From assembly GCF_030684315.1 (NCBI RefSeq), contig NC_081385.1:24395247-24459246 (forward strand): a stretch of 64,000 nucleotides of DNA. The letters are read 5' to 3'. The position numbers and the translations under genes were made by a program. Position 1 is the stretch's first letter, and each line of letters opens with the position of its first letter. Source of the DNA: Stegostoma tigrinum. Its lineage: Eukaryota. This document shows positions 7,101 through 50,259 of this stretch, in pieces. Below the pieces are notes generated by a model. It saw only the letters and a list, made by a program, of their open reading frames with translations. It made no database searches and was not told the origin of the DNA.

Positions 7101-10100
7101 GATCATAATATTTGACAAATCAGAATAAAACCTGGCTCTAAAGCTCATTTATTTGAATTTTGTAGTTTGTGAACATGGTGATTATACACTAAAACATATA
7201 CAGACAAGGCTTCAGACATACTTTAACAACAGAACATAACTTTACCAAACAAAACAAAATGTGGAAAATAAAAGTTATGCATATATATATCAAAGACTCA
7301 GTGTTTACAGTGGAGAATGATATGGAAGCTAGGGAACTTGGGGAAATAAATAGTGATATCTTGAGAAGCGTCTATATTACAGAGGAAGAGGTGGTGAATG
7401 TCTGAAAATGCATAGAGCTAAATAAATCCCCAGGACCTGATCACGTTTTCCCCGAGAACTTTGCAGGCAGTTAAGAAAGTCATTGCTGGGACTCTTGCTA
7501 AGAAATTTGAACCTTGATAGCCACAGGTGAGGTGTTAGAAGATTGGAGGTTGGTTAAAGTGGTGCTATTATTAAAGAAAGGTGGTAAGGAAAAGCCAGGA
7601 AACCATAGACTGATGATCCTAACGTCAGTGGTGGATAAATTGTTGGACGGGACTCTGAGGGACAGGATTTACATAGAAACATAGAAGATAGGAGTAGGAG
7701 GAGGTCATTAGGGTCTTCCAGCCTGCTCTGCCATTCATCATGATCATGGCTGAATGTTCAACTCAATAACCTAATCCTGCTTTCTCCCCATAATCTTTGA
7801 TCCCATTCTAGCTGCCTCTTGAATGCATTCAATGTTTTGGCATCAATTACTTCCTGTGGTAATGAATCTCACAGGCTCACCACTCATTGCATGAAGAAAC
7901 ATCTCCTGATCTGTCTCCTGAATGGTCTATCCCAAATCCTCAGACTGTGACCCTGGTTCCAGACACAACCACCATCAGGGACATCCTGTCTGTATCTACC
8001 CTGTCTAGACCTGTTAGAATTTATAAGTCTCTATGAGATCCCCACTCATTCATCTGAACTCCAGCGAAAATAGTCCTAACCTAGTCAATCTCTCCTCTTT
8101 CGTCAGACCTGCCATCTTCGGAATCACCTTGGTAAACCTTCGCTGCGCTCCCTTTAGCAAGAGCATCCTTCCTCATAAAACGAGGCCAAAACTGCACACA
8201 ATACTCTAGATGTAACCTCACCAAGGCCCTGTATAGCTGCAACAATGCATCCCTGCTCCTGTACTCGAAATTTCTCACAATGAAAGCCAACATATCATTT
8301 GCCTTCTTTACCACCTGCTGCACCTGCATGCTGACCTTCAGTGGCACAAGGACTCCCAGGTCTGGCTACACACCCCCTCTCCAGATTAACAGCCATTCAG
8401 GTGGTAATATTCCTTCTTATTTTTCCCTCCAAAGTGATTAACCTCACATTTATCCAAGTCATACTGCATCCGCCATTGATTTGCCCATGTACTTGGACAG
8501 GCAAGGTCCACTTAGAGATAGGCAACATGGCTTTGTGCATGAGAATTCATTAACCTGGTTGAGCCTTTTGAAGAAGTGATGAAGAAGAATGATGAAGGCA
8601 GAGGGGTGGCTGTTGTCTATGTAGACTTTAGAAAGGCACTCGGCAAGGTTCCACATCGTAGACTGGTTAAGAAGGTTAGAAAACATGGAGTACAGGGAGA
8701 AGTAGCTTCTTAGATGTAAAATTGGCTCAGACGTAGGAGACAAAGGGTGGTGGTGGAATGTTTCTTTTCGGACTAGAAACCTGTGACCAGCAGTGTGCAG
8801 CAAGAATTAGCTCTGGGTATACTGCCTACTGTCATTTATATAAATGATTTGAATGTGAATTTAGGAGGAATGGTAAGTAAGTTTGAGATGGCACCAAAAT
8901 TGGTGGTGTGGTAGATAGCGAAGAGGTACAACAGGACCTTGAAGAGATGAGCAAATGAGCCAATGAGTGGCAGATGGAGTTTTATTTAGATAAATGTGAA
9001 ATGCTGCATTTTGGGAAGGCAAATCATGGCACTTAATGGTAGGATTCTGGGAAGTGTTACTGAACAAAGAGACTTTGGGATGCCGGTGCATAGCTCCTTG
9101 AAAGTGGAGTCACAGGTAGACAGGGTAGTGAAGAAGACATTTGGTATGCTTGCTCTCACTGGTCAGAGAGTATAAGAGTTGAGGGGTCAGCTTTCAGCTG
9201 TTACAGGACATTGGTTAGGCCACTTTTGGAAAACTGCATTCAATTCTGGTATCCCTGTTACAGGAAAGCTGCTGTGAAACTTGAAAGGGTTCAGAAAAGA
9301 TTGGCAAGGTTGTTGGGTAGGAGGATTTGAGCTATAGGGAAAGGCAGAACAGGCTGCCTCCATTTTCCCTGGAGCATCAAAGACTGAGGGGTGACCTTAT
9401 AGAAAATTATGAAATTATGACAGGCATGGATATGGTGAATAGCCAAGGTCTTTTCCCAAGGGTGTGGGAGTCCAAAACTGGAGGGTATAGATTTAAGGTG
9501 AGAGGGGAAAGATTTAGAAGGGGCGTAAGGGACTGTTTTTCTCGTGCAGGGGGTGGTGCATCTGTAGAATGAGCAATCAAGGATGTGGTACATTTGCAAA
9601 GTGTAAAAGGCATCTGAATGGATGTATGAATAGTAAGGGTTTGGAAGGATATGGGCCAAATGCAAGTGAGACTAGACTAACTTAGAATACCTGGTCAGCA
9701 TGGATGAGTTGGGCTGAAGGGTCTGTTTCCATGCTGTGCATGTCTATGACTCTCTGACAGAAAGATCATAACATAGACAACAAAGTTTCAACCTGTTTAC
9801 AATGACATTTGTAACAGAGACTTAATACCAGATAAATATCACTCTTTTCTTAACATTTTACATTTTAAACAGCTGATTCTTTTCAATTTGTTTCTCTTGA
9901 ACTGGTAAGTCCTTTCTTTTAATGATTCCTTTCTAAATCTACTCACAAACTTCTCAATGTTTCAAACTCTTTCATTTCTAACACATAGCAGATCTCTATC
10001 TCTATTCCACAACTTCAAAGTTCCATAGATTAGGAACCACTTCTGCTGAAGTAACTGGTTTCCCTCAAATGAACTGAAAAGCTGTTCTCCTTCCAGGAGG

Positions 10101-13100
10101 GAATAAAAAATGTTCTCTTCTAAACTGAATTCTGATTTCTTCTGAACTAAACTTGCAACCTTCAGTTCTGAAAACAAAACTAAACTAACTGTCTTAATGT
10201 TCTTCCTCTGAAAGTTATAAATCCAACAATGTAAAAAATTATCCATTAACAACTATAGGGTTTATAACTGCAATGCAATCACATTCTTTCTTGGAACTGA
10301 AGTATTTATATCACAGCTCCAACTTGACTTTGTGACCTTTATGAGAAAGAAAATCAACCTGCCTCTATTTTAAAATCCAAATTCCAAAAACATAATAGAA
10401 TATATTTAATAACCTTTTTATCACTTAATTAACATAGTCTTTTGCTCACCTATTAGTGGCAATGCTTTCCATCTGCCAATCACTTAGTTGAGATACTGAT
10501 GTCTGCAGACAAATGCTCAATGCATTAGTCTGACATTTCTGTCTATTGTTTTCATGCTGGCATTATACTATCTGATGTACAAAAGGTTAATGCGCTCATT
10601 AAAGTGGGTCATGAAGGAATACTGTATAGATGTGCTAACTGTTTAACTACCAATTAAATTGAGGTTTCATAGGTGCAATCGTGTCATTTTGGACATCTTT
10701 TATATTCAGAAAGTCATGACTTAAATTTTGCAAAGGTCTGAAAAGAGAATGAGAAATATCAAGAAATGGTGGTCAGATGACATCACTCTTTGGTTACAAA
10801 AGTTTGTAAATTCTAGGAGACCAGAAACACAGAGGGAGGTAAGACATTCCACGCTTCTGAGGTTTTGAAGTGGTAGGTTTTGATTTTGATACACTATCAA
10901 TACTGAGAACAGGAAGTGTATGTAGGACAGTGTATTGGGATCTTGAACTAGACAGGAAAATTGATAACAAATAAAAAAGAATAATCATAAAATGTGAAGT
11001 TAAATTATTTCTGATGTACAACAATAAAATGTTCCAGCTGCACGACAGTAATTTCAACTTTAATTGCACTGCAATGCACTGTCCTTCAGGTATAAGAGCA
11101 GAAATTGCTTTGACAACTCAGCAAGCCTGGAAGCATTTGTGGAAAAAGAGTTAATGTTTCACATGCAAAGACACTTTTTAAGATTCCAAACAGGACTCTT
11201 TGAAATTGAACATTAACTCTGTTTTTCTCTCTGCAGATGCTGTTAGACCTGTTCAGATGTTTTTTATTTCAATTTTCCAGCATTTCCAGTATTTATTTGA
11301 CTATCCTTTAGAAATCTGTTTCAAGGGGCCTGGTTAACTCCTGCATGTAATTTGATCCCAAATTTTGCTTCTAGTTATTTATCAACAACTGAAATATGTG
11401 TAATATTAATTACAGCTTTAATTTCATATTCACAAAGTGCACGGAATGTTTTCACCCTCCAGTCATCCTACACAATTGTCTTGATCGATGTCTTTACAAT
11501 ATTGTCAAAGCCTTTCATTCTACTTTTGCAGATTCCCTCTGCATACTGATATATGAGCCGTTGTTTCGCTATGTTTCTTTCATGTTCAGTTTCCATGTAG
11601 TAACACTTCTGGTTGAATATTAGAGAATATAAAATATCAACATCCTGGTGCTTACCATTGTTCTGGAACTGAACTGGATTAACCATACAAGTACTGCGGA
11701 CACATGAGCACCTCAGAGGCTAGGAATCCTGCAGCAAATAAATCACCTCCTGACTCCCTAAAGCCTGTACACTACTTACAAAGCACAAGTCAGGAGTATG
11801 ATGGGGTACTTGCCTGGAATGAGTGCAGCTCTCTCACACAAGAAACTTGACGTGATCCTGGACAAAGCAGCCCTCTTGATCAGCACCACACAGAAACATC
11901 CACCCCCTTCACCGCGATGCTCAGTAGCAGCACTGTGTACCATCTACCTCAATATTACGAGCAGAATTCAGCATCTTCTAGACTCAAGGCCACTACCATG
12001 AGAAATACAAGGGCAGCAAATACAGAGGAAAATAAGCAGCACCTGCAGATTCCCCTTCAAGCCACTCACAATCCTTCTTTATTTTTCTAGTTTATTCCTA
12101 CGACCTATAATGCTAGACTTCATTTTGCTTATTTTATTTTGTTTCCTAAGAATTTGATTTTAAATATTTGCACTAGTTAACTTTGTCCCTGGGATTGTGC
12201 TACAATGCAACGACTGTAAACTTTTCACTGTACTCACTTGAATACGTTACGATAAAGCTAATTTGATTCAATTCAATTCACTTAGAAATATATTGCTGTG
12301 TTGCTGGGTCAAAATCCTGGCACTCCCTCCATAATGGCATTGTGGATCTACCTACATCTAATGAACTGCAGTGGTATGAGAAGGCAGTTGCTATCATTTT
12401 CTCAAGGGTAGCTAGTGCAAGGTAATAAATGCTGACCCAGCCAGCAATGCTCTTATCCCATGAATCAATTTTGAAAGTCATTGAAGTAAAAGAAAGTTGA
12501 AGTATGGTCAGATTCACCTCTTGCACCAGAGTCCAGCCATGAATGCAAAACAATTAGTAAGTAATAGAAAATGTTGCTTATGTAATATTTGCAAAAAATC
12601 ATGTGGTGTTTCTGGTTTTATTTATTACCTAATTTTCTGGCTTAGCAAATGATCACTCAGGTTTCAAAAGCCATAACACGTGATGAAATTCAAAGGACTA
12701 GGTTTTCAGCTCACTGGCAAGCATTTCTGATGTGGTGAAAATGATAGAAGTAGCCCTACATCACACGTACTGCACCCAAATCTGATACTTCGCATCCCTC
12801 CAGGCGGCATAATGGGCTCAGTTCAATCATCACACTTATGCAGATTCTGGAAGCAGCTGGGCATTTAAATAACCAGCTGCCTACATTGATAAGAGGCTTT
12901 TAGCGCAGCGAAATGTAGGACCCATAGTGTAGAGACTGACCATGTAAGAGTAGGTCTGTTCTCAGTGCATTTCCTTCAGATAGCCAAGATCCCCCATTGG
13001 AGAATTGAAATGCACCTTATGGTTATGGACTATCGATATCTTGGGTGTGGAGTCAGGGATCCTTTGGTCATGATGGGAGTTGTCAGTGTGCTTTGGAACT

Positions 13101-16100
13101 ATCAACAGGGGAGGGCGGTGTGCATAAAAGATTCGGAATTGCTAAGAGGTGTCAAGAAATGTCTAGAACTGTCAGCAGGCATTTAGAAGTGCCAACCTGT
13201 CAAAAATAATCAATCTGTCACAAAGTCCCAGGAATGTCAACAAGTGTCAAGAAGTGACTAAGAGTTCGACAAGCATTAACCTGTCAAGGAGTGTTAAAAT
13301 ATGTTTTCATTAACATGAGTGCTTTTGTAACTACAGTGCAGTCTTTGACATGGAACTTTAAGTAATAGTGTTATATTTTTCCCTTTGGGCATGGGTACTG
13401 AGGATGCTTAATGAGTTGAGATGATTGTAAAAGAAGGAAAAGTGGTGGGTGGAAGTAAGCATGAACTTGGCATATGGAAAGAGAGGACATCAAATATTGG
13501 TAAAAGGCTTTAGGTCGCAATGGATGGCATGGGTAGGGTATTAGAGTGTGTGGGATGATGGGAGTGGGCATTGGTAGGCGTAAAGGATATTTTACATTTT
13601 AAACACAATTTTTAAATGTTGGCAGCAGTACAGTCCTGAGGCAGGCTTTCTGCACAGTCCAACTCAAGAACTTGCAAACTCTTAAACTCTTCCTGGGTCA
13701 CCCAGCCTAATTCCCAAACCAGCCCCTGTCCCCAAAGCAAAAATCAGAAATGCATGGTAGCTGGTTTAAAGGTTAGATTCAGAGCTGGGGCTTTGCCAGC
13801 TTCTATACGCCCGAACCACACACTTGAGTTTGGCTCAAATGTTAGTAAAAAGATCCACAGAGCTTAACCTGATTTGAAAAGAATACAGAAGGCAGTGAAA
13901 GAACCAAACATGCAAAATAAGCTCAGGAGTAAGAACATTTACAAGCACATGATTATAAAGGACTATTGTCACACTGGCTAGTGAAAACCACATTGTTTTA
14001 CAGCTCGCTATTGATCTCAATATAAAGGTTAACACCTATAACCAAAGACTTACTTTACATTTACCTTTCAATTGTCTCTTCCAGATCAGGCAAAAGTATA
14101 TTGCTACCACAATGATAAATCCAATAACACCAATGAGTGAAGTTAGAATGTAAAGCAGCCAATGATCTGTGAAAGAAATAATAATTAATCTTGAAGTAAT
14201 GATGAATGGGAACAGATGCAAAATGTAAATAGAATGTATAATGTTTGAAATGCTTGGAAATATTTCTGCGAATGTCATATGATAGCAAAATTCAAATTTT
14301 TGCTTGACAAAAATAGTATCATTTTCTTCAGAAATCATTATAATTTTTGTGCCTAACATACACTGCAGTTAATAGATAAAACTACACTACATTTGTTTTC
14401 TACTTTCTTTGCACTACATTACAAAGCACTGCAGAAAAGCAGAAGGGCAGCTTAAATAGATCGATTCACAATGTCTTTTAATTTGTAAGTGATTAAGCAT
14501 CAGAAATAGGCTTATTTACTATAGCTTTAAGTAGTTGAATATTTCAATTTTACAAATTCTGAAACAAATAAAGAAGTTGCTATATATAATTAATCCGTGT
14601 GCCTACTTCCTAAAATAATTCTTCTGTAACAAGCATCAAGAGCTTTACACATGCATTAGTACATCGATCCTTACCTCCATGAGAAGCCACCAACGAAACA
14701 CTACCACTTGTCCAGCCATATCTGTTATTTGCTACACACCAGTAGACTCCTGCATCTTGAGATTGGAAGTGAGTCATCGTTAATTTTGAACTGCTTGATC
14801 CAGTTGAAGTGTAGTTTGTCAAATTCTTCAACCATGTTACCATGGCAACTGGGTTACTATCCACAGAGCATCTCAGTTCCACAAATGAATTTTGGGGGAC
14901 AGTGATACTTCTATTGGTCCCGAGATGGTACCTGTCATTGTTTTTCAACTTGTATGTTATTGTTGGATCTAGTGGCCCATCTGCAAGTAAAGAAAATGCA
15001 AACAATTTTTTGTATAAACAATAACTCTCACACACAGATGCAAACTGGCCAATGTACATAACATCTATGCATTACATCTATGTAACACATAACAGAAAAA
15101 TGTTTCAAACTGCTTCACAGAAAAGTCCAGCTAGTGTTAAGGAATAAAGTATAAGGAACAGTAGCTACAACCTTGTCCAAAGAAGAAGGCTGTCAGGATT
15201 GTCTTAAAAGAGAGAGAACGGGGGCGTGGGAGAGAGCGAGAGAGAGATGGGGGTAAATATGGAGGGAAGTTCGTATTTTAACATCTAACATGATATACAA
15301 GGTGGATGAGATTCTGATGAGAATTGACAGGGTAGATAGAAAACAGCTGTTCTCCTCAGTTAGAATTTCAGCAACAAGGAGGCACACTTTTAAAGCTGTA
15401 CAAAGGAGTTTAAAGTGGGTTTGAAGAACTTTTGTTTTCACCAGAAGGTGGTGGGAATCTGGAATGCACTGCCGAGGACAGCAGTTGCGATGGATAATCT
15501 TGTAAAGTACTTTGAAAAAGTCCTTGGATGAGCATTTGAAATTTCAAAGATTCCAGGCTACGGATCTAGTGCTGGAAAGTGGGACTAGTTTAGACTAAAT
15601 ATAGATTTTTTTTGTTAGTGTAGACTTGGTGAGCCAGAGGGCCTCTTCTACATTGCATGATTCTATGATTTAGCATATTTTGAATCAATTATGGATTGGA
15701 GAGGTCAACGTTAGAGGATTGTAGGACTGTTGGAGGTTGCAAAGATGGGCTGGAACAAGGCTATGGAGTCAATAGATTGCAAGGATGAAAATTTTAAAAT
15801 CAAGAGATTGGCAGACTATAAACCAATGCAAGTCAGTACACAGTGACAATAAAGAGAGTGGAACTTGGTGTGGTTAGGATACATATAGCGAAGACGGACA
15901 ATATTGCCAGCTTGTCAGTAAGAGGTTCACAAAAAGGAGCATGGCACAGACACTCCCTGGTTGTAAGCAGACACTAATGATGAGACAATAAGAAAAAAAA
16001 ACAAATTTAAAGTAAATATCTTTATCATTACATTTTATGCAATAGGCAAACTGCTAAGGATCATACTCACACATAACATCTAGTTTGATCTTTTTTGTTA

Positions 16101-19100
16101 CTGGCTGTTTGAAAATGACATGATTTATCTGACACATACAGACAGTTCTATGGTCTGTCACTTGAGGGATGATCTGAAATTGGCTGGTGACAACAGTTCT
16201 ACCATTAACAATTCCTTCCAAGGTTGATACAGTGCTGTTTGTCATCATGTTTGTTCCATTACAGATCCAGGTAAAGGAGATGTTCTCAGAGTACAATCCC
16301 TGGACAGAGCAGGTCAGGACAGACTTTTGTCCAGCAACCAAACTACCATTTATAATGGAAATTTCAGACAGCTCTGAGAGAGGAAAGAAAGAAATACAAT
16401 TTGTAATTTTGGTTAAATTGTATTGCACCTGTAGTTAAGTAAGTTTTCAAACTAGATTAAAGGAATCAAAAATCAAAATGTATGTTAGTGAATTACACTA
16501 ATGTCATTTTAGCTTGCTGCTGTGTCAGGATCTTTTGCCGCAACTTTTCGATAGAAATTGTCTAATTAGAATGACTCATATACCACACTCCTATCCTCTA
16601 CTTTACTTATAAGGTAACTGTAATGCAACAGTAAGACAAGTTGATGGTGTATTAATTGCAGCGGAAACTGGTTCTAAATGAGTATGCATTGATCACTATA
16701 TTTTCGGATTTCTTGCTGTGATTAACATACTTTCAAATTTGCTGATGGTATATTTCTGTCACTTTTTGTTACATTACTTCATGTTTGCCTGGGAGCACTT
16801 TATTTTGAGCCCAATTCCCCTGGGGTATATACTGAGTTCTACTCGAGTGACATCAACAACCGGCACACATACAGGAATGTAAAGGCCACTTGGAGAAGTT
16901 AGAGCTGAAGACAACTGAAGATTATTGGAAATCTTCATGAACACAGCTGCAGGCTTCCACTCAATATCATTGGACAGAAGCCATGTGTAATTTGTAATTT
17001 TCCTTTGTATTACATGTTATATGTAAGGCCTTGTCAAGGTCACTTCGTTTTAGAAAATCCTGTCCTTTAGTAGAATTCAACTTTGATTAAATGACTGCAA
17101 ACCAAGTAGCATTCACTTCTTATTCATAAGATTTTTGTTAACCAATACATTTAATATGTTTACTACTTATCAGTAGAATTGTTTGGTATCTTGTATGTTA
17201 CCTCTAGAGAGCATTTATTGACTAGTGTGTAACTGACAGTTAAAATATGGCAAGATCAATTTCAGAAACAAATTGAGCCAAAATGTTAAACATAAGGGCA
17301 TTGTAACCAAAGATTGATAGGCTCAAAGTTTCCCTTGATGGTAAGTATACTCATTTGCTGGCATGTTTTGTTTCATCAAAAGTATTTTAAAACATGCAGT
17401 TTCAGTTAAATGACTGCTACTTGCCTGCAGATAATCAATTAAACTCCTTAACTGCTTTATCAAGAACAATTTCCATGAAGTAATGTAACAAAAAGTGACA
17501 TAAATATACAATTGGCAATTTTGGAAGTATGTTACATCGACTTGGCATTAATCACAGCAAGGAATCTGAGCAATTTCCATGTTGGTAGTTGGGTCGCTGT
17601 TGTGACTGAATACTAGCTTAGGCAGCATCCTGATGCCGATCAAGGGGCCACACTTACATCTCATTTTAAACACCCACTGCCCCTCTCTGCAGTTTGCACT
17701 CCACAATGACAGTCTGTCAACTGGAATTTCTTTCTATTTTTAAATTGTTGCTATGCCTTCAGAAGATGCCTAAGCCACTAATCAGTCTGCAGATCAAAAA
17801 AAGTGTCACGTTATCAGGCATCAATGAAACAGAGGGTCAGGATACAAAGACGTATGTAACATTGGAGTCCTGATTTAAAATTCAGTAATTGGTGTATGAG
17901 TTTGTGTTCTTTTTTGTTCATGTTGCACAATTGAGTCAAATATTGCAGGTTTCTTTTGTTCACGTTGCACAATTGAGTCAAATATTGCAGGTTTCTTTCT
18001 AGCAATTTTCACTGATTTTAATTGGTATTTTTACATTTTTTCCAATTGCATGAATAAAGCATCTTCATCGACGCAAAACCTCCCACGTATCTCACAGAAT
18101 AATGATGGACATATTTGACACTGAGGCACAGAGCTATATGAATAGGTGATTACTAGCTTCAGCAAACAAGATTGTATTAAAAGAGTTGTAATAGAGAAGA
18201 AATGGAGAAATGAGAGATTTAGGGAGGAATTTCCAAAATGTAGATCCTAAGCAATTGAAAACACAGCTGCCAATGTTGAGTCAAAGCAACTCAGGATGAA
18301 TGAGGGAATTGAAAGAATCTATGAGTGTTATTGGGATAAGGAAAACCACAGAGAGAGAGAGGAGTAAGGTCAATGGAGGATTTGAAAAAAAAAGGGATGA
18401 ACATTTAGAATTCTTGGCATTGGTGAATTGGGAAGCATTGTTAGTCAATGAGCGCATGGTTGGTAGATTATTGGAATACAAGATTTTTTTGTGCAACAGA
18501 TGTGGACAATGTAATTAGCAAAATCTTTTTTTCTGGACTGTCAATTAACGACTAACAGAAAAATTACAAATAACACAAATAGTGCATGGCAAGATGTGAA
18601 ACTCAGAAGAGAAATAATAATCCCAAATAAGCTTTGAGATTCCCAAACAATTGTGAATAGAATCAACCAAGCTATACTGCAAATGTATTGTTTCTCTGCA
18701 AACTAGGTTTCTCATCTCATTTGTGACATAACAAGACAGAGTGCTGCATGTTTTTTTTTATTATTATTCACTAGTAAATCATTCTCCTCCATCTGGATCA
18801 GTCTTATACAATACTATTAAGTACTGAAAGCAGGGTATGATTCCTGCGGTGACTCTTGCAGCTTGAAGCATTCATTACATAGAAATTCTCACATTTACTT
18901 TCTGAAATCTCTGTCCGATATTTCCTTACACCTTATCACAACTTTGTCCAATTTAATTGTAGCCTGTTGATATATAATTTGGTTTCGATAAAGGGTTTGA
19001 AACAAAACATTAATCTAGCTCTTCTTACAGAAATCAAAGAACCAGCTACTTATTTCCAAAATTTGCTGGCTGCATAAAAAGTTGCATTATTGATTCCATA

Positions 19101-20664
19101 TATTTGGTCCTATATTGAAATACTGGACCAACTTTAGATGTATTCACTTTTAAATTGAATTGCAAAGCAACAGATAACAAAGTCTTCAAAAGTTACATGA
19201 GCATGTATGTAAGATAAACAGTTACAAAACTTAAATAAATTCCATAAAATTAAAGGAGCTGATGTCTTGTGGTATGAAGTGAAGAGACAATGAAAGTGGT
19301 AGATGTGCAAAATTCATTTCAGTGATGGCCTTTTTCTCACCATTGGTTCCACAGTGACAAGTTATTGTAAATCTGATTCAGGAAATGATATTACAAACAC
19401 ACAATGAATTGCTTCCCGCATTCTTCCAGCTAGCAATAGTTTGTTTGAATAATCTGGTCTGATATTGAATGTGCTTTCTAACAATGAATTATTTCAGAAA
19501 TGGTTTGGTGTTAATGTCACTGAACCTATCATGAATACAGACTCAGTGTTTTCACCCAGTATAATCAAATGTCTTTCTACTTATTACTTAAAATGTAAAT
19601 ACTTTACCGTAAATTTGTATCTTTGTTCCTTGTCCTTTTCTCTCTAATGGAGGGTAGATATTCGGTACTTGCACCACACAGATATATTTATAAGCAGAAT
19701 GTTGAAAAGAAGCATTTTCAATCTTCAGTGGTGTGGCACAAAGCTTGAAACGAACCAGAGTAACATTAGGAACACAGGTCAGCTTCTTCACCTCATATGC
19801 GGTAATATTCCCTGACGGTGGATCCCTCTTCCAATTAGCATGGACCCAGTCAGCATTAGTTCCATCGTAAATCATAAATGTGCAGTTGATTGACACTAAC
19901 TCTCCTCTCAAGGCAGTGACCAAACGTGGCTGAGTCACCTCACCAATGGAAGGGGCACCTGATGGAATAAAGAAATTCATTTTCAGCTGGCTTCAGTTAG
20001 AATTTCTTACTAAATAAATAGGAAACTTTGAAAACTCCGTATAAACAACAGTGAATTTGAAATACTCTTTGTGTTGGATCACATGTCAAAGACATTATTA
20101 AAAATACCTCTCCTGTCCGATTTAATTCTAAGCCATGCAACGGTTTGTTTCCAGGTTTTCTGCTGTATTTTTTGTTCGTGTTTTGAATTTGTTTCTTTTT
20201 ATTAAACCGAATGGATAGGATGTCATCATCAAAATCCATTGGAGATCTTTATTTCCAGTTCTCTGAAAGTGGCTGCTGTCAAGTTGAACGATGGGCAAAG
20301 ACAGACCCACTTTTAATTGAAATCTAAAATAAAATCCTTTAACTATTCTGAATCCTGTCAGCGTTAGTGTTCACAATCTATATACAAAGTATCGTCTGAA
20401 CTGGAATGTAACTTTTACACAGGTGGCTTAACCCAACTACCGTGATGTGGGCCATTGACCTTAATCGAATTGTCCAAATGACATGGTTGTGTCTCACTTG
20501 CTTTCTCTGCAGTTCCATACCTATAGAAAAGCTGAAACACCTTAGATGGGGTAATCGAAAGCCTACAATGCCAGCACCAAATGAATGTGCCAGTGTTCTG
20601 AGCAGAGCATCTTACCTTGAACTGCTGTTTGCAAAATGAAAAGCAGCTTCAGCGGGAGCTGCAT
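4022..20664 (-). CDS. Copy A: type I membrane Ig-superfamily receptor (leader - VJ-type V - C1-like - I/C2 - TM - tyrosine-motif tail), about 445-453 aa
   Basis: Manually spliced exons 20664-20616, 19958-19608, 16373-16071, 14980-14675, 14166-14054, 11608-11547, 10947-(10850 or stop at 10794), and tentatively 4180-4117 and 4037-4022. The first six introns are GT-AG with matching phases (1,1,1,1,0,2) and there are no stops. The 3' end after exon 7 is uncertain. Confidence 0.85.
4590..4743. mobile_element. Short Penelope-type inverted terminal-repeat insertion with hammerhead motif
   Basis: Head-to-head terminal-repeat fragments; CTGAAGA-AGGG..CCC-GAAACGTC at 4651-4678. Confidence 0.7.
5530..6290 (-). 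mobile_element. Decayed LINE (L2/CR1 group) RT fragment
   Basis: Resembles a reverse-strand RT-region sequence; no intact ORF. Confidence 0.45.
7275..9757 (+). mobile_element. CR1 LINE ORF2 3' part, with a nested opposite-strand CR1 at about 7674-8495
   Basis: KSPGPD- and KAFDKVPH-like motifs, RLRGDLIE, 3' tail ctatgactct; nested ORF 8081-8347 (LYRALVRLHLEYCVQFW). Confidence 0.85.
10794..10947 (-). CDS. Copy A exon 7, cytoplasmic with ITIM-type SQYTVL; either splices near 10850 or reads through to TAA at 10794
   Basis: Acceptor tttcctgtctag| (phase 2); SRSQYTVLHTLPVLSIDSVSKSKPTTSKPQKR, then GMSYLPLCFWSPRIYKLL* on read-through. Confidence 0.65.
11547..11608 (-). CDS. Copy A exon 6, cytoplasmic (KCYYMETEHERNIAKQRLIY)
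   Basis: Acceptor tattcaaccag|, donor CA|GTATGC; phase 0 to 2 exactly bridges exon 5 and exon 7. Confidence 0.72.
11645..12075 (+). mobile_element. LINE 3' fragment (L2/CR1 group)
   Basis: YKAQVRSMMGY...KKLDVILDKAALLI, typical of an ORF2 C-terminus. Confidence 0.6.
14054..14166 (-). CDS. Copy A exon 5, transmembrane segment and basic stop-transfer
   Basis: DHWLLYILTSLIGVIGFIIVVAIYFCLIWKRQLKGKCK; acceptor tttcacag|, phase-0 donor AAA|GTAAGT; no charged residue in the TM. Confidence 0.9.
14675..14980 (-). CDS. Copy A exon 4, I/C2-set Ig domain
   Basis: (Y)GPLDPTI...VELRCSVDSNPVAMVTWLK...QSQDAGVYWCVANNRYG; acceptor cttgcag|, donor G|GTAAGG; 306 nt. Confidence 0.93.
15270..15670 (+). mobile_element. 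CR1 3' end
   Basis: ttcaccagaaggtggtgggaatctggaatgcactgcc ... tail atgattctatgatt. Confidence 0.75.
16071..16373 (-). CDS. Copy A exon 3, C1-like (or CD80-type C2) Ig domain
   Basis: VLTCSVQGLYSENISFTW...VVTSQFQI...CMCQINHVIFKQPVTKKIKLDVM; acceptor ctctctcag|, donor T|GTGAGT; 303 nt. Confidence 0.92.
17912..17995. repeat. 42-bp tandem duplication (2 copies) in copy A intron 2
   Basis: ttttgttcaYgttgcacaattgagtcaaatattgcaggtttc x2, one mismatch. Confidence 0.95.
19608..19958 (-). CDS. Copy A exon 2, Ig V-set domain with germline-joined J-like G strand
   Basis: EVTQP...VSINCTF...ANWKR...LKIENASFQHSAYKYICVV...RKGQGTKIQIY; acceptor ttccatcag|, donor G|GTAAAG; 351 nt, phase 1-1. Confidence 0.93.
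20616..20664 (-). CDS. Copy A exon 1, signal peptide MQLPLKLLFILQTAVQ(G)
   Basis: 49-nt ATG exon ending CAAG|GTAAGA (phase 1), hydrophobic core, conserved in copy B. Confidence 0.9.
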
Positions 20665-22385: not shown

Positions 22386-23669
22386 TGAGTTGACCCTTTA
22401 CTTACACTGTCATGTTAACGTCCATACACATTTGAAACTGTATCACTGGCAAAAATTCAAATTACTGCATCTTAGAAAGTGACTGTGGGCACTTTCCCCA
22501 TTTTGGTAACAAGAGCTCCACCTTGTGCATAACTGCAACATCACACTGTTAAGATTTCTGATCGAGTGATGGGGCTCTTACGTAACATTCTGATTCAGTG
22601 GTGTTGGCATCTATTTCGGTAACTAACGTCTGTATTCCAAAGATTTTATAAATGTAACAGCAAGATGCTAATGACAAGATAATATGTTTAGTTTGTCATG
22701 ATGATTTAAAAACAAACATTGACCATGACAAAGGGATTATATATCCCCAGCTATTCCCCAATAAAATATAATTGAAGCTTTTACGTCAATGGAAAACGCT
22801 GGGTGGCATTTTGGTCTAATGACTTATGTTATGACTTAACAGGGAGGAGAACGTCAATAACTAAGCCCCATTGTTCCCGAACAAATCGCAAGATTGTAAA
22901 CACCCAATTTAAACTGTCAAGATAAACAAATTACACGACTGCCTGCTATTCAGGACTAAAGCAATTCATATCAAGTCTTACCACACTTATTATTTTTTGG
23001 AGGAGTCAGCATTTATTAAAATTCTTCTTTCTTTTGCGCAAGAAAACTTTAAAATTGGTTCCTTCACTTCTGGTCAGGTAAATTCTGTTTCACTTTACGA
23101 GATATAACTGTTTGTTAGAAAGCACTAAAATGAATATTTGTGACTGAATAAGAGGGGATTAAACAACTTCTGTATTGATTCATTAAGTTCCACAGATCTT
23201 GACTATGTCTTTTCCCCATGTATTATTCAGCATAAACTTTTTTATTTGCGTTGTTTCACTCCAAAGTAAATTGTTTAGGTGTTTTGTTCAATAGTTGCTT
23301 GAAATACTGATTGAGCTGAAACATAGGATTAGTGAACATGGTTGATCTGGAGAAAATGCTGGATTAGATTTATTTTATTCCTTCACATTATAATCATAAA
23401 CCTTATGTCACAAATTGCCAAAACATATGCTTTAAATGTCTACATTCAGTGCAAATAAACAGTATTTAATTGAAATCACTGTTTCATTATGAGAGATAAT
23501 AAATTTGTTAAAATATTGAGTCCATTAGAAAATTCTGTTTTTATCTCTCTCTTTTTTAACTGTGTGGAAACCAGCACCAGGTCAGAGTACCAGACTAACA
23601 CCATCAAACTCAATGGTGGAACTGAGCTACATGACAGAGAGAACCAACTAATGTCAAGCTCATGTATTT

Positions 23670-24095
23670 GTGAGCCATCATCATCCGAGGAAAAAGGCTT
23701 TGACTGTCCACCCTATCTAATCCTCTGATCATCTTGTATGTTTCTATTAAGTCACCTCTTAACCTTCTTCTCTCGAATGAAAACAGCCTGAAGTTCCTCA
23801 GCCTTTCCTCACAAGACCTTCCCTCCATACCAGGCAACATCCTAGTAAATCTCCACGGCAGCCTTTCCAATGCTTCTACATCCTTCCTATAATGCGGCGA
23901 CCAGAACTGTACATAATACTCCAAGTGCGACCGCACCAGAGTTTTGTACAGCTGCAACATGACCTCATGGGTCCAAAACTCAATCCCTCTACCTATAAAA
24001 CCTAACACACCGTACGCCTTCTTAACAACCCTATCCACCTGGGTGGCAATTTTCAGGGATCTATGCACATGGACACTGAGATGTCCCTGCTCATC
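23670..24095 (-). mobile_element. CR1 ORF2 C-terminal fragment
   Basis: ORF 23610-24068: LYKTLVRSHLEYYVQFWSPHY...RRLRGDLIETYK. Confidence 0.9.
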
Positions 24096-29350: not shown

Positions 29351-29599
29351 TAGCTCAGATTTTCTCACACATACCTTTCTTGTATTCAGGGATCAGATTA
29401 TGAGTTGACATTAATTTACACTGTCATGTTGATGTCAATGCACATCTGAAACTGCATTACTGGCATAATTCAATATCACCGCATCTTACAAAGGCACTGT
29501 GGGCATTTTCCCTGTGTGGGAATAAGAGCGCCACCTTGTGCATAACTGCAACTTCACACGTTGGATTTCTGACAGGGAGACAGGACTCACTTGTAATGT

Positions 29600-31299: not shown

Positions 31300-31722
31300 T
31301 AGGTTGGGAGGTAGGGGGGAGATAGGTCAGTCCAGGGAGGACAAACAGTTCAAGGGGGTGGGATGAGGTTAATAGGGAGGTAACCAGCCCAGCTCAAATC
31401 CCACCCCCATCTCTTACATACTAAACTCATCCCGCCCCCTTGACCTGTCTGCCCTCCCTGGACCGAGCTATCTCCTCCCTACCGCCCCACCTACATTCAC
31501 CTTTACTGGCCCCATCCCCGCCTCTTTGACCTGTCTGCCTCCTCTCCACCTATCTTCTCCTTTATCCATCTTCTGTCCGCCTTCCCCTCTCTCCCTATTT
31601 ATTTCAGAACCCCCTTCCCTTCTCCTTTTACTGAAGAAGGATCTAGGCCCGAAACCTCAGCCTTCCTGCTCCTCTGATGCTGCTTGGCCTGTTGTGTTCA
31701 TCCAGCTCTACACCTTGTTATC
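31300..31722. mobile_element. Penelope-type head-to-head terminal-repeat fragments at the copy B truncation point
   Basis: Purine-rich then pyrimidine-rich arms, ending ...ctacaccttgttatc. Confidence 0.8.
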
Positions 31723-31939
31723 GATGTTCTGTCACTTGGGGGATGATCTCAAATTCATTGGTAGCAACAGGTTTACCATTAACCATTCCTTTCAAAGTTG
31801 GGACAGTGATATTTGTGGTCATGTTTGTTCCATTACAGATAATACAGATGTTGTCAGCTGCAACCCTTGGACAGAGCAGGTCAGAACAATCTTATATCCA
31901 GCAATCAAACCACCATCCACTTTGGAAATTTCAAGGATC
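31722..31939 (-). pseudogene. Copy B C1-like exon, frameshifted and 3'-truncated
   Basis: LEISKVDGGLIAGYKIVLTCSVQGL...ICNGTNMTTNITVPTLKGMVNGKPVATNEFEIIPQVTEHR, then abuts a Penelope-type repeat. Confidence 0.88.
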
Positions 31940-39049: not shown

Positions 39050-39399
39050 CAGAAATCTGTATCCTTGTTCCTTGCCCTCTTCTCTCCAATAGAGGGCAGG
39101 CACTTAGTAGTCTTGCCACACAGATATAATTATAATTAGAATGATGAAAGGAAACATTTTCTACCTCCAGTGATGTGACACACAGTGTCTGAAACCACTC
39201 AGAGTAACATCAGGGATACAGGTCAGCTTCTTCATTTCATAGGAGGTATAAATCATCTATGGTGATTCCTTGTGCCAGGATATACACACTCAGTCAGTGT
39301 CTGTTCCATTTTCAATCCATGCACAGTTTATTGAGACTGGCTCTCCTCTCAAGACGCCGAGCAGATGTGGTTAAACCACCTCTCCAATGAACGGGTGAC
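39050..39399 (-). pseudogene. Copy B VJ exon, disabled
   Basis: HPFIGEVV*PHLLGVLRGEPVSINCAW...D*VCISWHKESP*...KKLTCIPDVTL...(frameshift)...YICVARL...RRGQGTRIQIS; three stops and one frameshift; splice sites retained. Confidence 0.9.
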
Positions 39400-40067
39400 C
39401 TGACAGAATACAGTTCACCATTTTCAGCTGCGTTCAGTTCTTCCAAAAGAAATCAGAAACTTTGAAAACACAATTCAGAAAAGGCTAAACTTGAAATATT
39501 TTTCCTGTTGGATTCAATATAGAAAGCACAATTAAATACAGCAGCCTTTTCTCAGATTTAATTCTAACTTTTGCAATAATTTGTTTCTTGGTTTTCTGCA
39601 ATAGTATGTTTCTCCTGCCATTCTGAATATTTGTGTTAATGTGAAACCATACTGATCAAGACATCACAATTAGGCTGTATTGGGAGATCCTTGTTTCCAG
39701 TGTCTCTGAATTTGTTGGTGTCAATATGAACCACGTGCAAAAAGAGAATCACTTTAATAGAAAATTTAAAACAAAATTGTAAATATTGTGAATCTTGTCA
39801 GCGTTATTAGAGTTCACAATCAATATATAAAGTATCATCTGTAATGGAATGTAACTTTTCCACAGGAGGCTTAATCCAAACACTGTGATGTGGGCCTTTG
39901 AACAGTGATCTCAACTGAATTGTCCAAAAGACATGGTGATATCTCACTTGCTCTCCCTGTAGTTCCACACTATGTAGAAAAGCTGAAATATTATAAAAGG
40001 AGGGAATTGAGTACATACAATGCTGGTACCAAGTGAATGTACTAGTGTTCTCAGCAGAGCAAGTCAC

Positions 40068-40116
40068 CTGGACCTGCTGTTTGCAAAGTGAAAAGCAGCT
40101 TCAGCAGGAGCTGCAT
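40068..40116 (-). pseudogene. Copy B leader exon MQLLLKLLFTLQTAGP(G)
   Basis: 49-nt paralog of copy A exon 1, donor G|GTGACT. Confidence 0.88.
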
Positions 40117-40477
40117 CTTTCAGTGTTTCCAAATGTTCTGAAACTGTTTCCTGTTCCAGACATGAAGCAGGAAAAATGTGGTCTTTTGTGTGTTTGAGAG
40201 ATAATCTACCGAGGGAATAATTTATACTTCAACCTGAAACTGACTAAAGCTGCAAAATGCCATGGAGTTTAGTTGCTCCAAGGACTGAAATTATGTGAGA
40301 CTTTCTCTTTGTTAAAACTGAAATGGTGACAAATCCATTTGGAGAACATGAAAGGTCTGGGTTAAAGGGAACTACATTTTATTATGCTGCAGAGGAGTTG
40401 TGCTGGCTGTAAATGTTGCAGGAAATGATTTCAATTCTCCAATTTGAATTGTGTATATATTTTTTTTTAATGTTTTA

Positions 40478-48578: not shown

Positions 48579-48869
48579 GACCTGGTATTTCCATTGTGGA
48601 TGGTGCTTTGGCTACTGGATGTAAGTCTATGCTGACCTGCTCTGACCAGGGACTGTACTCTGAGAATATCTCCTTTAATGGATCTATGTTTGAGCAAACA
48701 TCATCAGAAACATCACTTCCCCATCCTTTACTGTCAATGGCAAATCAGTTGCCAACAGCAAATTTGAGATCATCCCTCAAGAAACCCACCGTAGCACTGA
48801 CTGTACATGTCAAAAAAAAAGTGATTTTCAAACAACTAGTAATATATGATATCAAACGAGATGCTATGT
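48579..48869 (+). pseudogene. Copy C (inverted) C1-like exon, decayed
   Basis: GISIVDGALATGCKSMLTCSDQGLYSENISF...VIFKQLVIYDIKRDAM, matching copy A exon 3 with internal indels. Confidence 0.85.
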
Positions 48870-49325
48870 GTCACAATTCTCCTCCACAGTATTGCTGTTT
48901 TCAGAAATGGCTAACAGAAAATGCTCCTAGCCAGATAAGCAATTCCTGTTTTTTCTGTGGTTTATGACTGTGTAAACATTCTCCAGTTAATGGCACAAGA
49001 AAGTTAAGACCTCACACTAAAACATGAATCATAGTCCAGACTGAACTTGTACATAATGCTGAGAATGATCTACATTGGTGGGGATGCCCTCCAGGTTTAA
49101 ACACGATCCTGTCTGCTGGTTCAGGAGCATTTTGAAAATGACTTGGCTCCATTTGAGAATAAGTTATGAGTTATCCAGTGCGCTGACTAATTGATAAAGA
49201 AATTAAATCATTTGTTCAGCAAATGATTAATTTGAATTATCCCTGGTCGCTGAATTCACTACATTAGTTCAACCAATGATAATTTCCAAAGACATAATTC
49301 ATTATTCATTTAAGTTGAAAATATG

Positions 49326-49948
49326 ACATTTTGAAAACACTTGCTTTCACACATATATTTTCCCTCAAATCAAGCTCATCATAATGACCCCTGATCTAAC
49401 TTAATCTCTGGAAACACCTTCAAATTGTGCAACATTGCAGACTTGTCCTTCTTCTTCACATGAATTTTGAGCCTTTAAAAACAAAGTTGGAATTTACCTG
49501 ACGACTAGCATTTGAGAAATTTTTTGGAGGCTTTTCAAATTGCCTTATATACTAGACTAGGAATATTGACCATTCAAATAGGAGCAAAATATTGCAGATG
49601 CTGGAAATTTAATATAAAGGCAGAAAGTGCTGAAGACACACAGCAGATGTGACAGAATCTGTGGAGAGAGAAACACAGTTAATGTTTCAAGTCTAGTATA
49701 ACTACTCTTCAGAACTGAGGGGCCATTCAATCAGATTTTGCAAATCGAAAACGTTGATACATAATATATATTCCTGATGTTAATTTGCCAATGTTACGTC
49801 CATATAACTACAGTAAACTCTGATTTTTCTTGTGCAAATAACATTTTGAAAACACTTCCTTTCACACATATATTTTCCCTCAAATCAAAATAATGTCTCC
49901 TGATCTAACTTAATCTCTGGAAACACCTTCAAATTGTGCAACATTGCA
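49326..49948. repeat. Direct repeat of about 110 bp (49326-49440 and 49841-49948)
   Basis: acattttgaaaacact...gaaacaccttcaaattgtgcaacattgca occurs twice, near-identical. Confidence 0.9.
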
Positions 49949-49977
49949 CAAATTCTTTTATTCCATTTTTCTTTTAG

Positions 49978-50259
49978 ATGGTCCATAGTTTCTCACAATA
50001 ATGTATAGGTTGTATGGCAGCAAAATTTACCATCCGGTGACCAATAGAATTGAGATTGTATTGCTCTGTATAGTAACCCTGCCTCTGCTGTGATCTGTCT
50101 GAAGGATCAGCAAAACTGTACTGAGATAGTACAAATGGCAGCTGGATTAAATGGTTCAAAAGTAAAGGAAAGACATTTCCACTCTGAAGATGCAGGAGTC
50201 CACTGGTATATGGCAAACCATAGCTATGGTTGAAGAAACAGTGATACAAGTTGAAAAAG
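49978..50259 (+). pseudogene. Copy C (inverted) I/C2 exon, decayed
   Basis: Acceptor ttcttttag|ATGGTCCA; GP*FLTIMYRL...YHPVTNR...CSV-SNP...HFHSEDAGVHWYMANHSYG*; donor AAG|GTAAGT; matches copy A exon 4. Confidence 0.85.

What the first reader, a model, noticed from the sequence alone, without database searches (positions are those of the whole stretch)
14054..20664. Non-rearranging receptor with antigen-receptor-like VJ + C1-like domains plus a third I/C2 domain
Seen in sequence: one exon encodes a complete V domain including the J-type diglycine motif (GQGTKIQI), with no 12/23 RSS found nearby. The next exon has C1-set hallmarks (LTCSVQGLYSENISFTW, CQINH..FKQP), followed by an I/C2 exon and an uncharged TM. 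Established: germline-joined VJ domains occur in NKp30/NCR3, SIRP, CD8, NITR and PRARP; a VJ-C1 pairing is the proposed architecture of the pre-RAG Ig/TCR ancestor; V-C1like-C2 three-domain ectodomains occur in nectins/CADM, generally without a GxGT J motif. Inference: this is a chondrichthyan immune receptor family that I cannot match to a named gene, combining features of both groups.
Basis: partly seen in the sequence, partly recalled or inferred. Interest (0 to 1): 0.88.

Follow-up and report, generated by a model that had tools for sequence, protein, structure and literature searches.

The report
Shark VJ-C1-C2 inhibitory receptor gene
This is an intact zebra-shark gene for a cell-surface immune receptor with an antibody-like fused V-J domain and a true C1 constant domain on a Siglec-like stalk and inhibitory tail; databases already predict it under a misleading "Siglec/MAG-like" name, so it is an interesting variant, not a new kind of system.

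Summary
On the minus strand lie five phase-1 exons with GT..AG borders: leader, V with a fused J motif, C1, I-set/C2 and an uncharged TM. Their translations are identical to residues 1-370 of RefSeq XP_048418313.2, "myelin-associated glycoprotein-like", Stegostoma tigrinum.

Contigs from a related species, in runs only guessed to be RNA, skip the introns at these borders.

- **No rearrangement:** V and J share one exon and there is no RSS.
- **Domain 2:** C1-set by Pfam, by profile search (UrIg2, Ig CH, SIRP-gamma) and by Foldseek on an AlphaFold model (MHC II beta2, beta2-microglobulin).
- **V domain:** closest to lambda VL, TCR V-alpha and IgNAR V. It lacks the Siglec arginine and the Siglec cysteine pattern.
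- **Siglec link:** domains 2-3 align collinearly with Siglec-8 and MAG, and the tail, encoded outside the window, carries Siglec-like ITIM and "EYSVV" motifs.

The family occurs in sharks, skates, rays and coelacanth. I found no paper on it. The window also holds two pseudogene remnants.

My reading is an inhibitory receptor that does not bind sialic acid and is a sister to the Siglecs: a new variant of a known kind. The scan had already met a broken paralogue just beyond this window.

The parts
20616..20664 (-). Coding part of the leader exon (MQLPLKLLFILQTAVQ plus the first base of Gly17), followed by a GT donor
   Evidence: It is identical to P0015 residues 1-16. A loose end of the related-species contigs joins a leader sequence to the V exon.
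19608..19958 (-). V exon with a fused J-like G strand (GQGTKIQIY). It has the canonical Cys-Trp-Cys triad, two extra invariant Cys and an invariant PP in the FG loop.
   Evidence: Pfam V-set scores 17.9 bits, below the cut-off. The family V profile hits lambda VL at 2.3e-8 and TCR V-alpha at 3.1e-7. The AlphaFold model has pLDDT 79.7, and its neighbours are VL and TCR V domains.
16071..16373 (-). C1-set domain exon (LTCSV...FTWIC...VCMCQINH)
   Evidence: Pfam C1-set scores 33.7 bits and C2-set_2 26.7, both above the cut-off of 21. PDB hits: SIRP-gamma 1e-6; with the family profile, UrIg2 6e-16 (three C domains summed), Ig CH and SIRP-gamma 2e-11. The model has seven strands including a D strand, and its Foldseek top hits are MHC II beta2, beta2-microglobulin and HLA-DM.
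14675..14980 (-). I-set/C2 domain exon (ELRCSVDSNPVAMVTW...GVYWCVANNRYG)
   Evidence: Pfam Ig_3 scores 47.4 bits and I-set 38.2. PDB hits are contactins and MAG at 2.4e-14. The domain is collinear with domain 3 of Siglec-8.
14065..14166 (-). Transmembrane exon with an uncharged helix, ending KRQLK and followed by a GT donor
   Evidence: In the related-species contigs it splices on to a cytoplasmic exon that is not in this window.
39053..40172 (-). Pseudogene copy 2: leader-like segment (40172-40068, 87% nucleotide identity) and V exon (39395-39053, 73%) with stops and frameshifts
31721..31933 (-). Pseudogene copy 2: truncated, frameshifted C1 exon (79% nucleotide identity)
48587..50232 (+). 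Pseudogene copy 3 on the opposite strand: C1 exon (48587-48869, 75%) and partial I-set exon (about 49950-50232), both with frameshifts and stops

Best explanation
This is an intact zebra-shark gene for a type I membrane protein of the immunoglobulin superfamily. The order of parts is signal peptide, non-rearranging V domain with a fused J-like G strand, a true C1-set domain, an I-set/C2 domain and an uncharged transmembrane helix.

The cytoplasmic tail is encoded beyond the window's start. In the RefSeq product it carries three conserved tyrosine motifs: IIYAFV, VSYADI and SEYSVV.

The gene belongs to a tandemly duplicated family with many dead copies. The family is conserved in sharks, skates, rays and coelacanth.

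Its stalk (part of domain 2, the linker and domain 3) and its tail resemble those of Siglecs. Its V domain is of the canonical antigen-receptor type and lacks the sialic-acid-binding features.

Inferred mechanism: the V domain binds a ligand, probably a protein, through its CDR-like loops, which include a conserved (V/I)(Y/F)PP FG loop. Src-family kinases then phosphorylate the ITIM and ITSM-like tyrosines, which recruit SHP-type phosphatases and damp activation of the cell. This is how SIRP-alpha, the CD33-related Siglecs and PD-1 work.

Shown here: the gene structure, its intactness, the domain classes, intron-skipping contigs of a relative in another species, and the taxonomic spread. Inferred: the signalling, the type of ligand and the expressing cell type.
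For: - **Gene model:** the exons, phases and splice sites are. The product is identical to P0015 (XP_048418313.2) over residues 1-370.
- **Transcripts:** contigs of a related species skip the introns at these exon borders.
- **Domain classes:**, with the models and fold searches.
- **No RSS:**
- **Family:** members, and the invariant Cys, Trp, PP, GxGT and CxCxxxH positions, are.
- **Tail:** the tyrosine motifs are conserved from rays to coelacanth in alignment A1.
- **Siglec link:** domains 2-3 are collinear with Siglec-8 (47.2 bits, residues 134-331 against 126-327) and hit MAG at 1.4e-13. They share DHGT..CQ(I/V) and LDVxYxP. A frog Siglec tail ends in EVEYSVVK.
- **Not a lectin V:** the V has no F-strand arginine and keeps the canonical B-F cysteines.
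- **Duplicates:** pseudogene copies lie in the window, and the scan noted a broken paralogue just beyond it.
Against: - The cytoplasmic exons are not in the window. The inhibitory tail therefore rests on the RefSeq model and on a related species' contig that continues from the TM exon into ...VNVSIEPS.
- The intron-skipping contigs come from another species and could be from a paralogue. Their runs are only guessed to be RNA.
- No ligand, cell type or phosphatase binding is known.
- Codon changes against those contigs are 27 non-synonymous to 8 synonymous. That fits fast immune-receptor evolution, but it also fits weak constraint.
- The domain-2 profile does not detect domain 2 of a frog Siglec, so kinship with Siglecs rests mainly on domain 3, the linker, part of domain 2 and the tail.
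Confidence: 0.72

Rival explanations
1. It is a bona fide Siglec, as the RefSeq names say: a sialic-acid-binding lectin whose V domain has merely diverged.
For: Full-length search of solved structures puts MAG (1.4e-13) and Siglec-8 (1.3e-12) on top, with domains 2-3 collinear. The tail has Siglec-like ITIM and EYSVV motifs. CD22 and MAG have a V / C1-fold / C2 order (PMC5624926, PMC5150538). A W-x-C in domain 2 aligns with the Siglec-8 domain-2 cysteine. Protein-atlas feature neighbours carry the Ig_CD22 family (a lead only).
Against: None of the 19 members has an arginine on strand F. The V domain keeps the canonical B-F disulfide and Trp instead of the Siglec B-E and interdomain pattern. 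The V profile hits VL, TCR V and IgNAR V, and no Siglec V among its best 60; in the single-sequence search Siglec-7 V scores E 1.2. Frog Siglec V and domain 2 score nothing against the family profiles. No Ig_CD22 Pfam hit was listed.
Confidence: 0.07
2. It is a relic of the pre-RAG antigen-receptor lineage, of the UrIg/UrIg2/PRARP kind. The VJ-C1 core would be ancestral, and the I-set domain and ITIM tail later additions.
For: V and J share one exon, with a split leader. The V profile is closest to rearranging V domains, and the alignment runs through the J region. The domain-2 profile's best PDB entry is UrIg2 V-C1-C2-C3 (6e-16), then Ig CH. A Heterodontus isoform is V-C1-TM without domain 3.
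Against: The UrIg2 score is the sum of three weak domains (16-23 bits each), and single Ig or SIRP domains score higher (41-50 bits). The UrIg2 V is not among the top 60 V hits. The best TCR V-alpha score comes from an engineered CDR3 that happens to contain PPL. The GxGT motif is widespread among non-rearranging V domains (PMC11599192). Domain 3 and the tail are Siglec-like. Linkage to the MHC or the antigen-receptor complex was not testable, and no PRARP sequences were on hand.
Confidence: 0.15
3. It is a SIRP-family member (VJ-like V, C1 domains, ITIM tail) in which the third domain was replaced.
For: Domain 2's best single-sequence PDB hit is SIRP-gamma domain 3 (1e-6), and SIRP-alpha is also listed. 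With the profile, SIRP-gamma scores 46.8 bits. The SIRP-alpha V is a structural neighbour at Z 11.1. A SIRP-beta-like cluster is among the atlas structure neighbours.
Against: Domain 3 is I-set, not C1. No SIRP V is among the best 60 V-profile hits. The structural Z-scores are ties with many other V domains. Identity is low, and no orthology evidence exists.
Confidence: 0.1
4. It is a nectin/CADM-type adhesion molecule (V / C1-like / C2).
For: The domain order is the same. VIA-align ties Necl-4 domain 2 (Z 11.8), nectin-4 and PVR domain 2 with the model. Atlas structure neighbours include CADM1 and nectin-4.
Against: No nectin or CADM appears among the best 60 (domain searches) or the 20 (full-length search) sequence hits listed. 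The tail has ITIM-type motifs, not the PDZ-, afadin- or 4.1-binding motifs known for nectins and CADMs (established knowledge). The family is tandemly duplicated with many pseudogenes and changes fast, which is typical of immune receptors.
Confidence: 0.03

Closest known systems
Siglecs (MAG/Siglec-4, CD22, the CD33-related Siglec-8)
   Same: The ectodomain order is V / C1-fold / C2. Domains 2-3 are collinear in sequence, sharing DHGT..CQ(I/V) and LDVxYxP. The TM is uncharged, and the tail has an ITIM plus an EYSxV-type distal motif. Genes lie in tandem clusters with dead copies. In coelacanth there is a possible activating twin with an Arg in the TM.
   Different: The V domain is canonical: B-F disulfide, Trp, J-like GxGT and no essential arginine. 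Domain 2 scores as C1-set by sequence, whereas Siglec domain 2 was predicted to be C2. Frog Siglec V and domain 2 are not detected by the family profiles.
SIRP-alpha/beta/gamma
   Same: A non-rearranging V with a J-like motif is followed by a true C1-set domain. The tail carries ITIMs. SIRP-gamma is the best single-domain hit for domain 2.
   Different: The third domain is I-set/C2 rather than a second C1. The V domain shows no specific similarity to SIRP V.
UrIg / UrIg2 (PMC12227049) and PRARP
   Same: VJ is encoded in one exon with a split leader, next to a C1 domain. They occur in elasmobranchs without rearrangement. UrIg2 is the top PDB entry for the domain-2 profile.
   Different: UrIg2 has nine or more C1-type domains, and no I-set domain or ITIM is described for it. 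Similarity per domain is weak. Linkage to the MHC or the antigen-receptor complex is unknown for this gene. PRARP could not be compared, because neither the paper nor the sequences were on hand.
CD28/CTLA-4 family
   Same: The FG loop has a conserved (V/I)(Y/F)PP, followed by GxGT, at the same distance from the F-strand cysteine as in CTLA-4 (recalled from memory).
   Different: The defining motif is [M/L/I][Y/F]PPPY on a single-V receptor (PMC11599192). Here there are only two prolines, two further Ig domains, and no CD28 or CTLA-4 among the V hits.
Nectin / CADM / PVR
   Same: Three-domain V / C1-like / C2 ectodomain; domain 2 is a structural neighbour.
   Different: No sequence-level hits. 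The tail is ITIM-type. The V has a J-like motif.

Membership tests
Siglec | Essential arginine on strand F of the V domain, which binds sialic acid | tested here: not met
   The F strand reads (Y)xYxC(x)V in all aligned members and has no Arg. The frog Siglec P0031 shows the expected YYFRVE.
Siglec | Non-canonical V cysteine pattern: a B-E intrasheet disulfide plus an interdomain disulfide to domain 2 | tested here: not met
   The canonical B-strand Cys, C-strand Trp and F-strand Cys are invariant, with two further invariant Cys between C' and E. A domain-2 W-x-C aligns with the Siglec-8 domain-2 Cys, but it is absent from coelacanth and sawshark members. The pairing itself is not testable here.
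Siglec | C-type domains 2-3 and a tail with an ITIM plus an ITIM-like motif | tested here: met
   Siglec-8 aligns over domains 2-3 at 47.2 bits, and MAG scores 1.4e-13. Tail motifs are in alignment A1.
Rearranging antigen receptors (Ig/TCR) | V segment flanked by an RSS, with J encoded separately | tested here: not met
   V and J are continuous in one exon. No RSS was found above chance.
Rearranging antigen receptors (Ig/TCR) | C1-set domain directly after VJ | tested here: met
UrIg/UrIg2 | VJ followed by a string of C1-type domains, with linkage to the MHC or the antigen-receptor complex (PMC12227049) | tested here: not met
   There is only one C1 domain, followed by I-set. Linkage is not testable: the window holds only family copies and retroelements.
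SIRP | V plus two C1-set domains plus a tail with ITIMs | tested here: not met
   Domain 2 is C1, with SIRP-gamma as its best hit. Domain 3 is I-set/Ig_3, not C1.
CD28/CTLA-4 | A single V ectodomain with [M/L/I][Y/F]PPPY in the FG loop (PMC11599192) | tested here: not met
   The FG loop is (V/I)(Y/F)PP(L/V)(E/H), with two prolines, and the ectodomain has three domains.
Nectin/CADM | V / C1-like / C2 ectodomain with sequence similarity to the nectin family and an adhesion-type tail | tested here: not met
   The architecture is met and there are structural ties. No sequence hits appear in the listed top hits, and the tail is ITIM-type.
PRARP | VJ-C1-TM receptors of bony fish, amphibians, reptiles and birds (Fu et al. 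2019, as cited in PMC10751288) | not tested
   The paper is not held, and no PRARP sequence was returned by any search.
ITIM-bearing inhibitory IgSF receptors (functional class) | Uncharged TM and [S/I/V/L]xYxx[I/V/L] motifs in the tail | tested here: met
   The TM exon is uncharged. IIYAFV, VSYADI and SEYSVV are in P0015 and conserved in the family. The tail exons lie outside the window.

The most novel reading that the evidence does not exclude
The family could be a surviving intermediate showing that Siglecs and the antigen-receptor-like VJ-C1 receptors (SIRP, UrIg, PRARP) descend from one V-C1-C2 inhibitory receptor. It keeps the ancestral canonical VJ-type V and a sequence-typical C1 domain on the stalk and tail that Siglecs inherited. 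It has been conserved for more than 400 million years in cartilaginous fish and coelacanth, and its conserved YPP FG loop would bind a protein ligand.
Probability: 0.15. Interest if true: 0.7.

Novelty: new variant of a known kind. Interest (0 to 1): 0.45.

Why it matters
**Annotation.** It corrects a systematic labelling problem. About twenty RefSeq proteins called Siglec-5/8/12/13/14, MAG-like or sialoadhesin-like in sharks, rays and coelacanth lack the sialic-acid-binding V domain and should not be counted as lectins.

**Biology.** It adds another non-rearranging VJ-C1 receptor family to the small set used to reason about how antigen receptors arose. It also ties that architecture to the Siglec stalk and tail, so common ancestry can be tested with domain trees and synteny.

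**Limits.** It is not a new type of system. Inhibitory IgSF receptors with VJ-like V and C1 domains are already known (SIRP, PRARP).

Tried and rejected
- **The look-up of encoding contigs:** I could not fetch the DNA beyond the window that holds the cytoplasmic exons, nor the neighbouring genes for synteny.
- **Joined model:** Exons were searched one by one. Full-length searches used the database protein P0015, which matches each exon exactly.
- **Cytoplasmic exons:** I looked in the window by tblastn, by six-frame motif search and by a DNA pattern taken from the transcript's loose end. Nothing was found.
- **Papers:** a search for "PRARP" returned mainly urology papers. The PRARP paper and the 2023 UrIg paper are not held.
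- **Wider homologues:** a word-limited search with the coelacanth protein found only its own cluster.
- **VIA-align:** wide searches did not discriminate for either model. For V, TCR V, MPZ, SIRP V and PD-1 all tie. For domain 2, Necl-4, IgY Fc, CD22 d2, IgM and PD-L1 all tie within Z 1.
- **CTLA-4/CD28 kinship:** rejected. It rests only on a local YPP motif.
- **Expression:** no run on record as RNA holds the zebra-shark locus itself, so expression in this species is not shown.

Full report
**What is in the sequence**

The finding lies on the minus strand. The ORF list and the sequence show five coding exons:

| Exon | Coordinates | Content |
|---|---|---|
| Leader | ATG 20664 to 20616 | signal peptide |
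| V | 19958-19608 | ends ...PNIYPPLERKGQGTKIQIY |
| Domain 2 | 16373-16071 | LTCSVQGLYSENISFTWIC...VCMCQINHVIFKQP |
| Domain 3 | 14980-14675 | ELRCSVDSNPVAMVTW...GVYWCVANNRYG |
| TM | 14166-14065 | uncharged helix, then KRQLK |

All eight intron ends are GT or AG, and all junctions are phase 1, as is usual for IgSF genes. An RSS scan of the whole window gave one chance-level hit far from the gene. V and J lie in one exon, so the gene does not rearrange.

**It is an annotated, intact gene**

A search of 1.8 billion representative proteins with the V exon found only 14 proteins at E <= 0.001, six of them at E <= 1e-24.

Cluster look-up named them. The closest cluster holds XP_020370730.2 (whale shark) and XP_048418313.2 (P0015, Stegostoma tigrinum, "myelin-associated glycoprotein-like"). 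Each exon translation is an exact substring of P0015, at residues 1-16, 18-133, 135-234, 236-336 and 338-370. The split codons between them give G, E, Y and D. The window is therefore zebra-shark DNA, and the gene is the RefSeq model.

Exons were searched separately, and full-length questions were put with the stored protein P0015.

**Intron-skipping contigs in a related species**

No listed run on record as RNA holds the locus itself. Four runs of one study, from a related organism and only guessed to be RNA, hold about 5% of the sampled words of the stretch.

When laid on 14000-19999, their contigs are about 93-97% identical to the exons. They skip 14980->16071 and 16371->19608 in all four runs, and 14168->14684 in one run. 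The skipped ends are CT..AC on the plus strand, which is GT..AG on the gene's strand. The last two joints have 2 and 7 unmatched letters between the two sides.

One 1468-base contig carries the V, C1, I-set and TM exons together. Loose ends continue into a leader (...LQTAVQG) and into a cytoplasmic exon (...VNVSIEPS).

**Cytoplasmic tail**

The tail of P0015 is DPVNVSVEPSPETM...IIYAFV...VSYADIVI...SEYSVVRV. It is not encoded anywhere in the window. Its exons must lie more than 14 kb downstream, beyond position 1. This does not fit another first-stage note that places tail exons at 4022-11608.

**Domain classes**

- **V domain.** It is weak against Pfam V-set, at 17.9 bits against a cut-off of 26. 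A profile of seven family V domains (A4) hits lambda VL (2.3e-8), TCR V-alpha (3.1e-7; 2.8e-5 for a second TCR V-alpha sequence) and shark IgNAR V (1.4e-4). The alignments run through the J region. The first protein that is not an antigen receptor is MPZL1, at 1.4e-3.
  - The best TCR score is inflated by a PPL in the CDR3 of that chain, an affinity-engineered TCR as far as I recall.
  - Antibodies also dominate the PDB. I therefore read the result as "canonical, antigen-receptor-like V" and no more.
  - The AlphaFold model (pLDDT 79.7) has VL and TCR V-alpha as its Foldseek neighbours. VIA-align ties these with MPZ, SIRP-alpha V and PD-1.
- **Domain 2.** It passes Pfam C1-set (33.7 bits) and also the CD80-like C2-set_2 family (26.7 bits); the cut-off for both is 21.
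  - All 12 family members tested hit C1-set.
  - By single-sequence search its best solved relatives are SIRP-gamma domain 3 (1e-6), IgE Fc, SIRP-alpha, IgA and MHC II beta.
  - With a family profile (A5) the best are UrIg2 V-C1-C2-C3 (6e-16, the sum of three 16-23-bit domains), IgG and IgA constant domains (41-54 bits) and SIRP-gamma (46.8 bits).
  - The model (pLDDT 79.5) has seven strands including a D strand. Its Foldseek top 50 are MHC II beta2, beta2-microglobulin and HLA-DM. VIA-align cannot separate these from Necl-4, nectin, PD-L1, CD22 and MAG domain 2.
  - The family keeps the C1 signature C-x-(I/V)-x-H (CQINH).
- **Domain 3.** It is Ig_3/I-set. Contactins and MAG are its best hits.

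**The link to Siglecs**

With full-length P0015 the best solved structures are MAG (1.4e-13) and Siglec-8 (1.3e-12). The Siglec-8 match is one alignment, residues 134-331 against 126-327, so it covers domains 2 and 3 collinearly. The two share ...P..DHGT...CQ(I/V)... and ...(I/V)(K/R)LDV.Y.P at the junction between the domains. A frog Siglec gives the same collinear match, and its tail ends in EVEYSVVK, like the family's SEYSVVRV.

The literature shows that domain 2 of CD22 and of MAG has a C1-type fold although it was predicted to be C2 (PMC5624926, PMC5150538). A V / C1 / C2 order therefore also describes the classic Siglecs.

Against membership:
- No member has the F-strand arginine.
- The V domain keeps the canonical disulfide and Trp.
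- The family V and domain-2 profiles give no significant score on the frog Siglec.

My reading is a sister or mosaic relative of the Siglecs that carries a non-lectin V.

**Other families considered**

| Family | What it is | Why this gene is not a member |
|---|---|---|
| UrIg2 | VJ plus nine or more C1-type domains, linked to the IgH/TCR complex (PMC12227049) | only one C1, weak similarity per domain, linkage untested |
| SIRP | shares VJ-like V, C1 and ITIMs | has a second C1 where this gene has I-set |
| CD28/CTLA-4 | defined by [M/L/I][Y/F]PPPY on a single V (PMC11599192) | the invariant PP here is only a local resemblance |
| Nectin/CADM | shares the domain order and structural ties | no sequence similarity, and a different kind of tail |
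| PRARP | VJ-C1-TM receptors | could not be tested: paper and sequences not on hand |

**Family and locus**

Members were found in many elasmobranchs: Rhincodon, Stegostoma, Hemiscyllium, Chiloscyllium, Heterodontus, Carcharodon, Cetorhinus, Scyliorhinus, Mustelus, Heptranchias, Pristiophorus, and the skates and rays Leucoraja, Rhinoraja, Narcine, Mobula and Hypanus. The coelacanth also has the family. All carry automatic names.

I did not see chimaera, ray-finned fish or tetrapod members, but the searches that reach far were limited.

The window also holds two dead copies:
- a leader, a V and a truncated C1 on the minus strand (40172-39053 and 31933-31721);
- a C1 and a partial I-set on the plus strand (48587-50232).

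Both have stops and frameshifts. The scan had already followed up a broken paralogue about 7 kb beyond this window and reached a similar reading.

Codon changes between this gene and the related species' contigs are 27 non-synonymous to 8 synonymous among the differences listed. That is roughly neutral. It fits a fast-evolving immune receptor but does not prove selection.

**Mechanism**

This part is inferred. An uncharged TM and three conserved [S/I/V]xYxx[V/I] motifs put the protein in the class of inhibitory receptors that recruit SHP phosphatases after tyrosine phosphorylation. This is established for SIRP-alpha, the CD33-related Siglecs and PD-1.

The ligand is unknown. Because the lectin features are absent and the FG loop is invariant, I expect a protein ligand.

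In coelacanth a second form has a 98% identical V-C1 region, a TM arginine and a short tail (P0012 against P0017). This suggests paired activating and inhibitory forms.

**Verdict**

The gene is real and intact, but it is already predicted in RefSeq under misleading names, and I found no paper that describes the family. It is a new variant of a known kind, and of moderate interest.

Noticed in passing
window 14312-14833 (minus strand): Contigs of the related species run unspliced from the I-set exon through its donor into the intron, at lower depth than the spliced contigs. Read through, the frame adds GKDRCTNACVKLLMLVTEELF and then a stop. This would give a secreted form without a TM, but it could also be unspliced pre-mRNA or contaminating DNA.
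   Followed up: partly
P0012 and P0017 (Latimeria chalumnae): Two coelacanth proteins share 98% identity over residues 1-235 (V and C1). One has a long tail with three tyrosine motifs. The other has an Arg inside the TM (ISFAVRAVLVV) and a short tail. They look like a paired inhibitory and activating receptor.
   Followed up: partly
P0003 (Heterodontus isoform X5), P0019 (Hemiscyllium), P0002 (Chiloscyllium): Predicted variants exist: V-C1-TM without domain 3 (all exons are phase 1, so skipping keeps the frame), a model with two V domains, and a 243-aa model that joins V straight to the tail. The last two may be errors of gene prediction.
   Followed up: no
window 28400-30800, 43100-44300, 57400-60200: These are G+C-rich repeats with proline-rich ORFs. 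An ORF at 30106-30699 contains ...VVYCIHCTRCGFLYIGETKRRLGDRFAEHL..., which looks like the GIY-YIG endonuclease of Penelope-like retroelements (from memory, not tested). They separate the V and C1 exons of pseudogene copy 2.
   Followed up: no
window 60251-63145 (minus strand), 25830-26399 (plus strand), 23610-24068 (minus strand): LINE-type ORFs for reverse transcriptase and for an apurinic-type endonuclease (judged by eye, not tested). They are retroelement copies that fill much of the space between the receptor gene copies.
   Followed up: no
window 16373-16071, domain 2: Two extra cysteines lie beside the canonical pair: W-I-C in strand C, and the first C of V-C-M-C-Q-I-N-H. The W-x-C aligns with the Siglec-8 domain-2 cysteine, which I recall forms the interdomain disulfide in Siglecs. 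Coelacanth and sawshark members lack it but keep the CxC. The pairing is unknown.
   Followed up: partly
window 4022-11608: Another first-stage note places alternative cytoplasmic exons of this gene here. The RefSeq tail and the exon that follows TM in the related-species contigs are not in the window at all, so that note needs its own check.
   Followed up: partly
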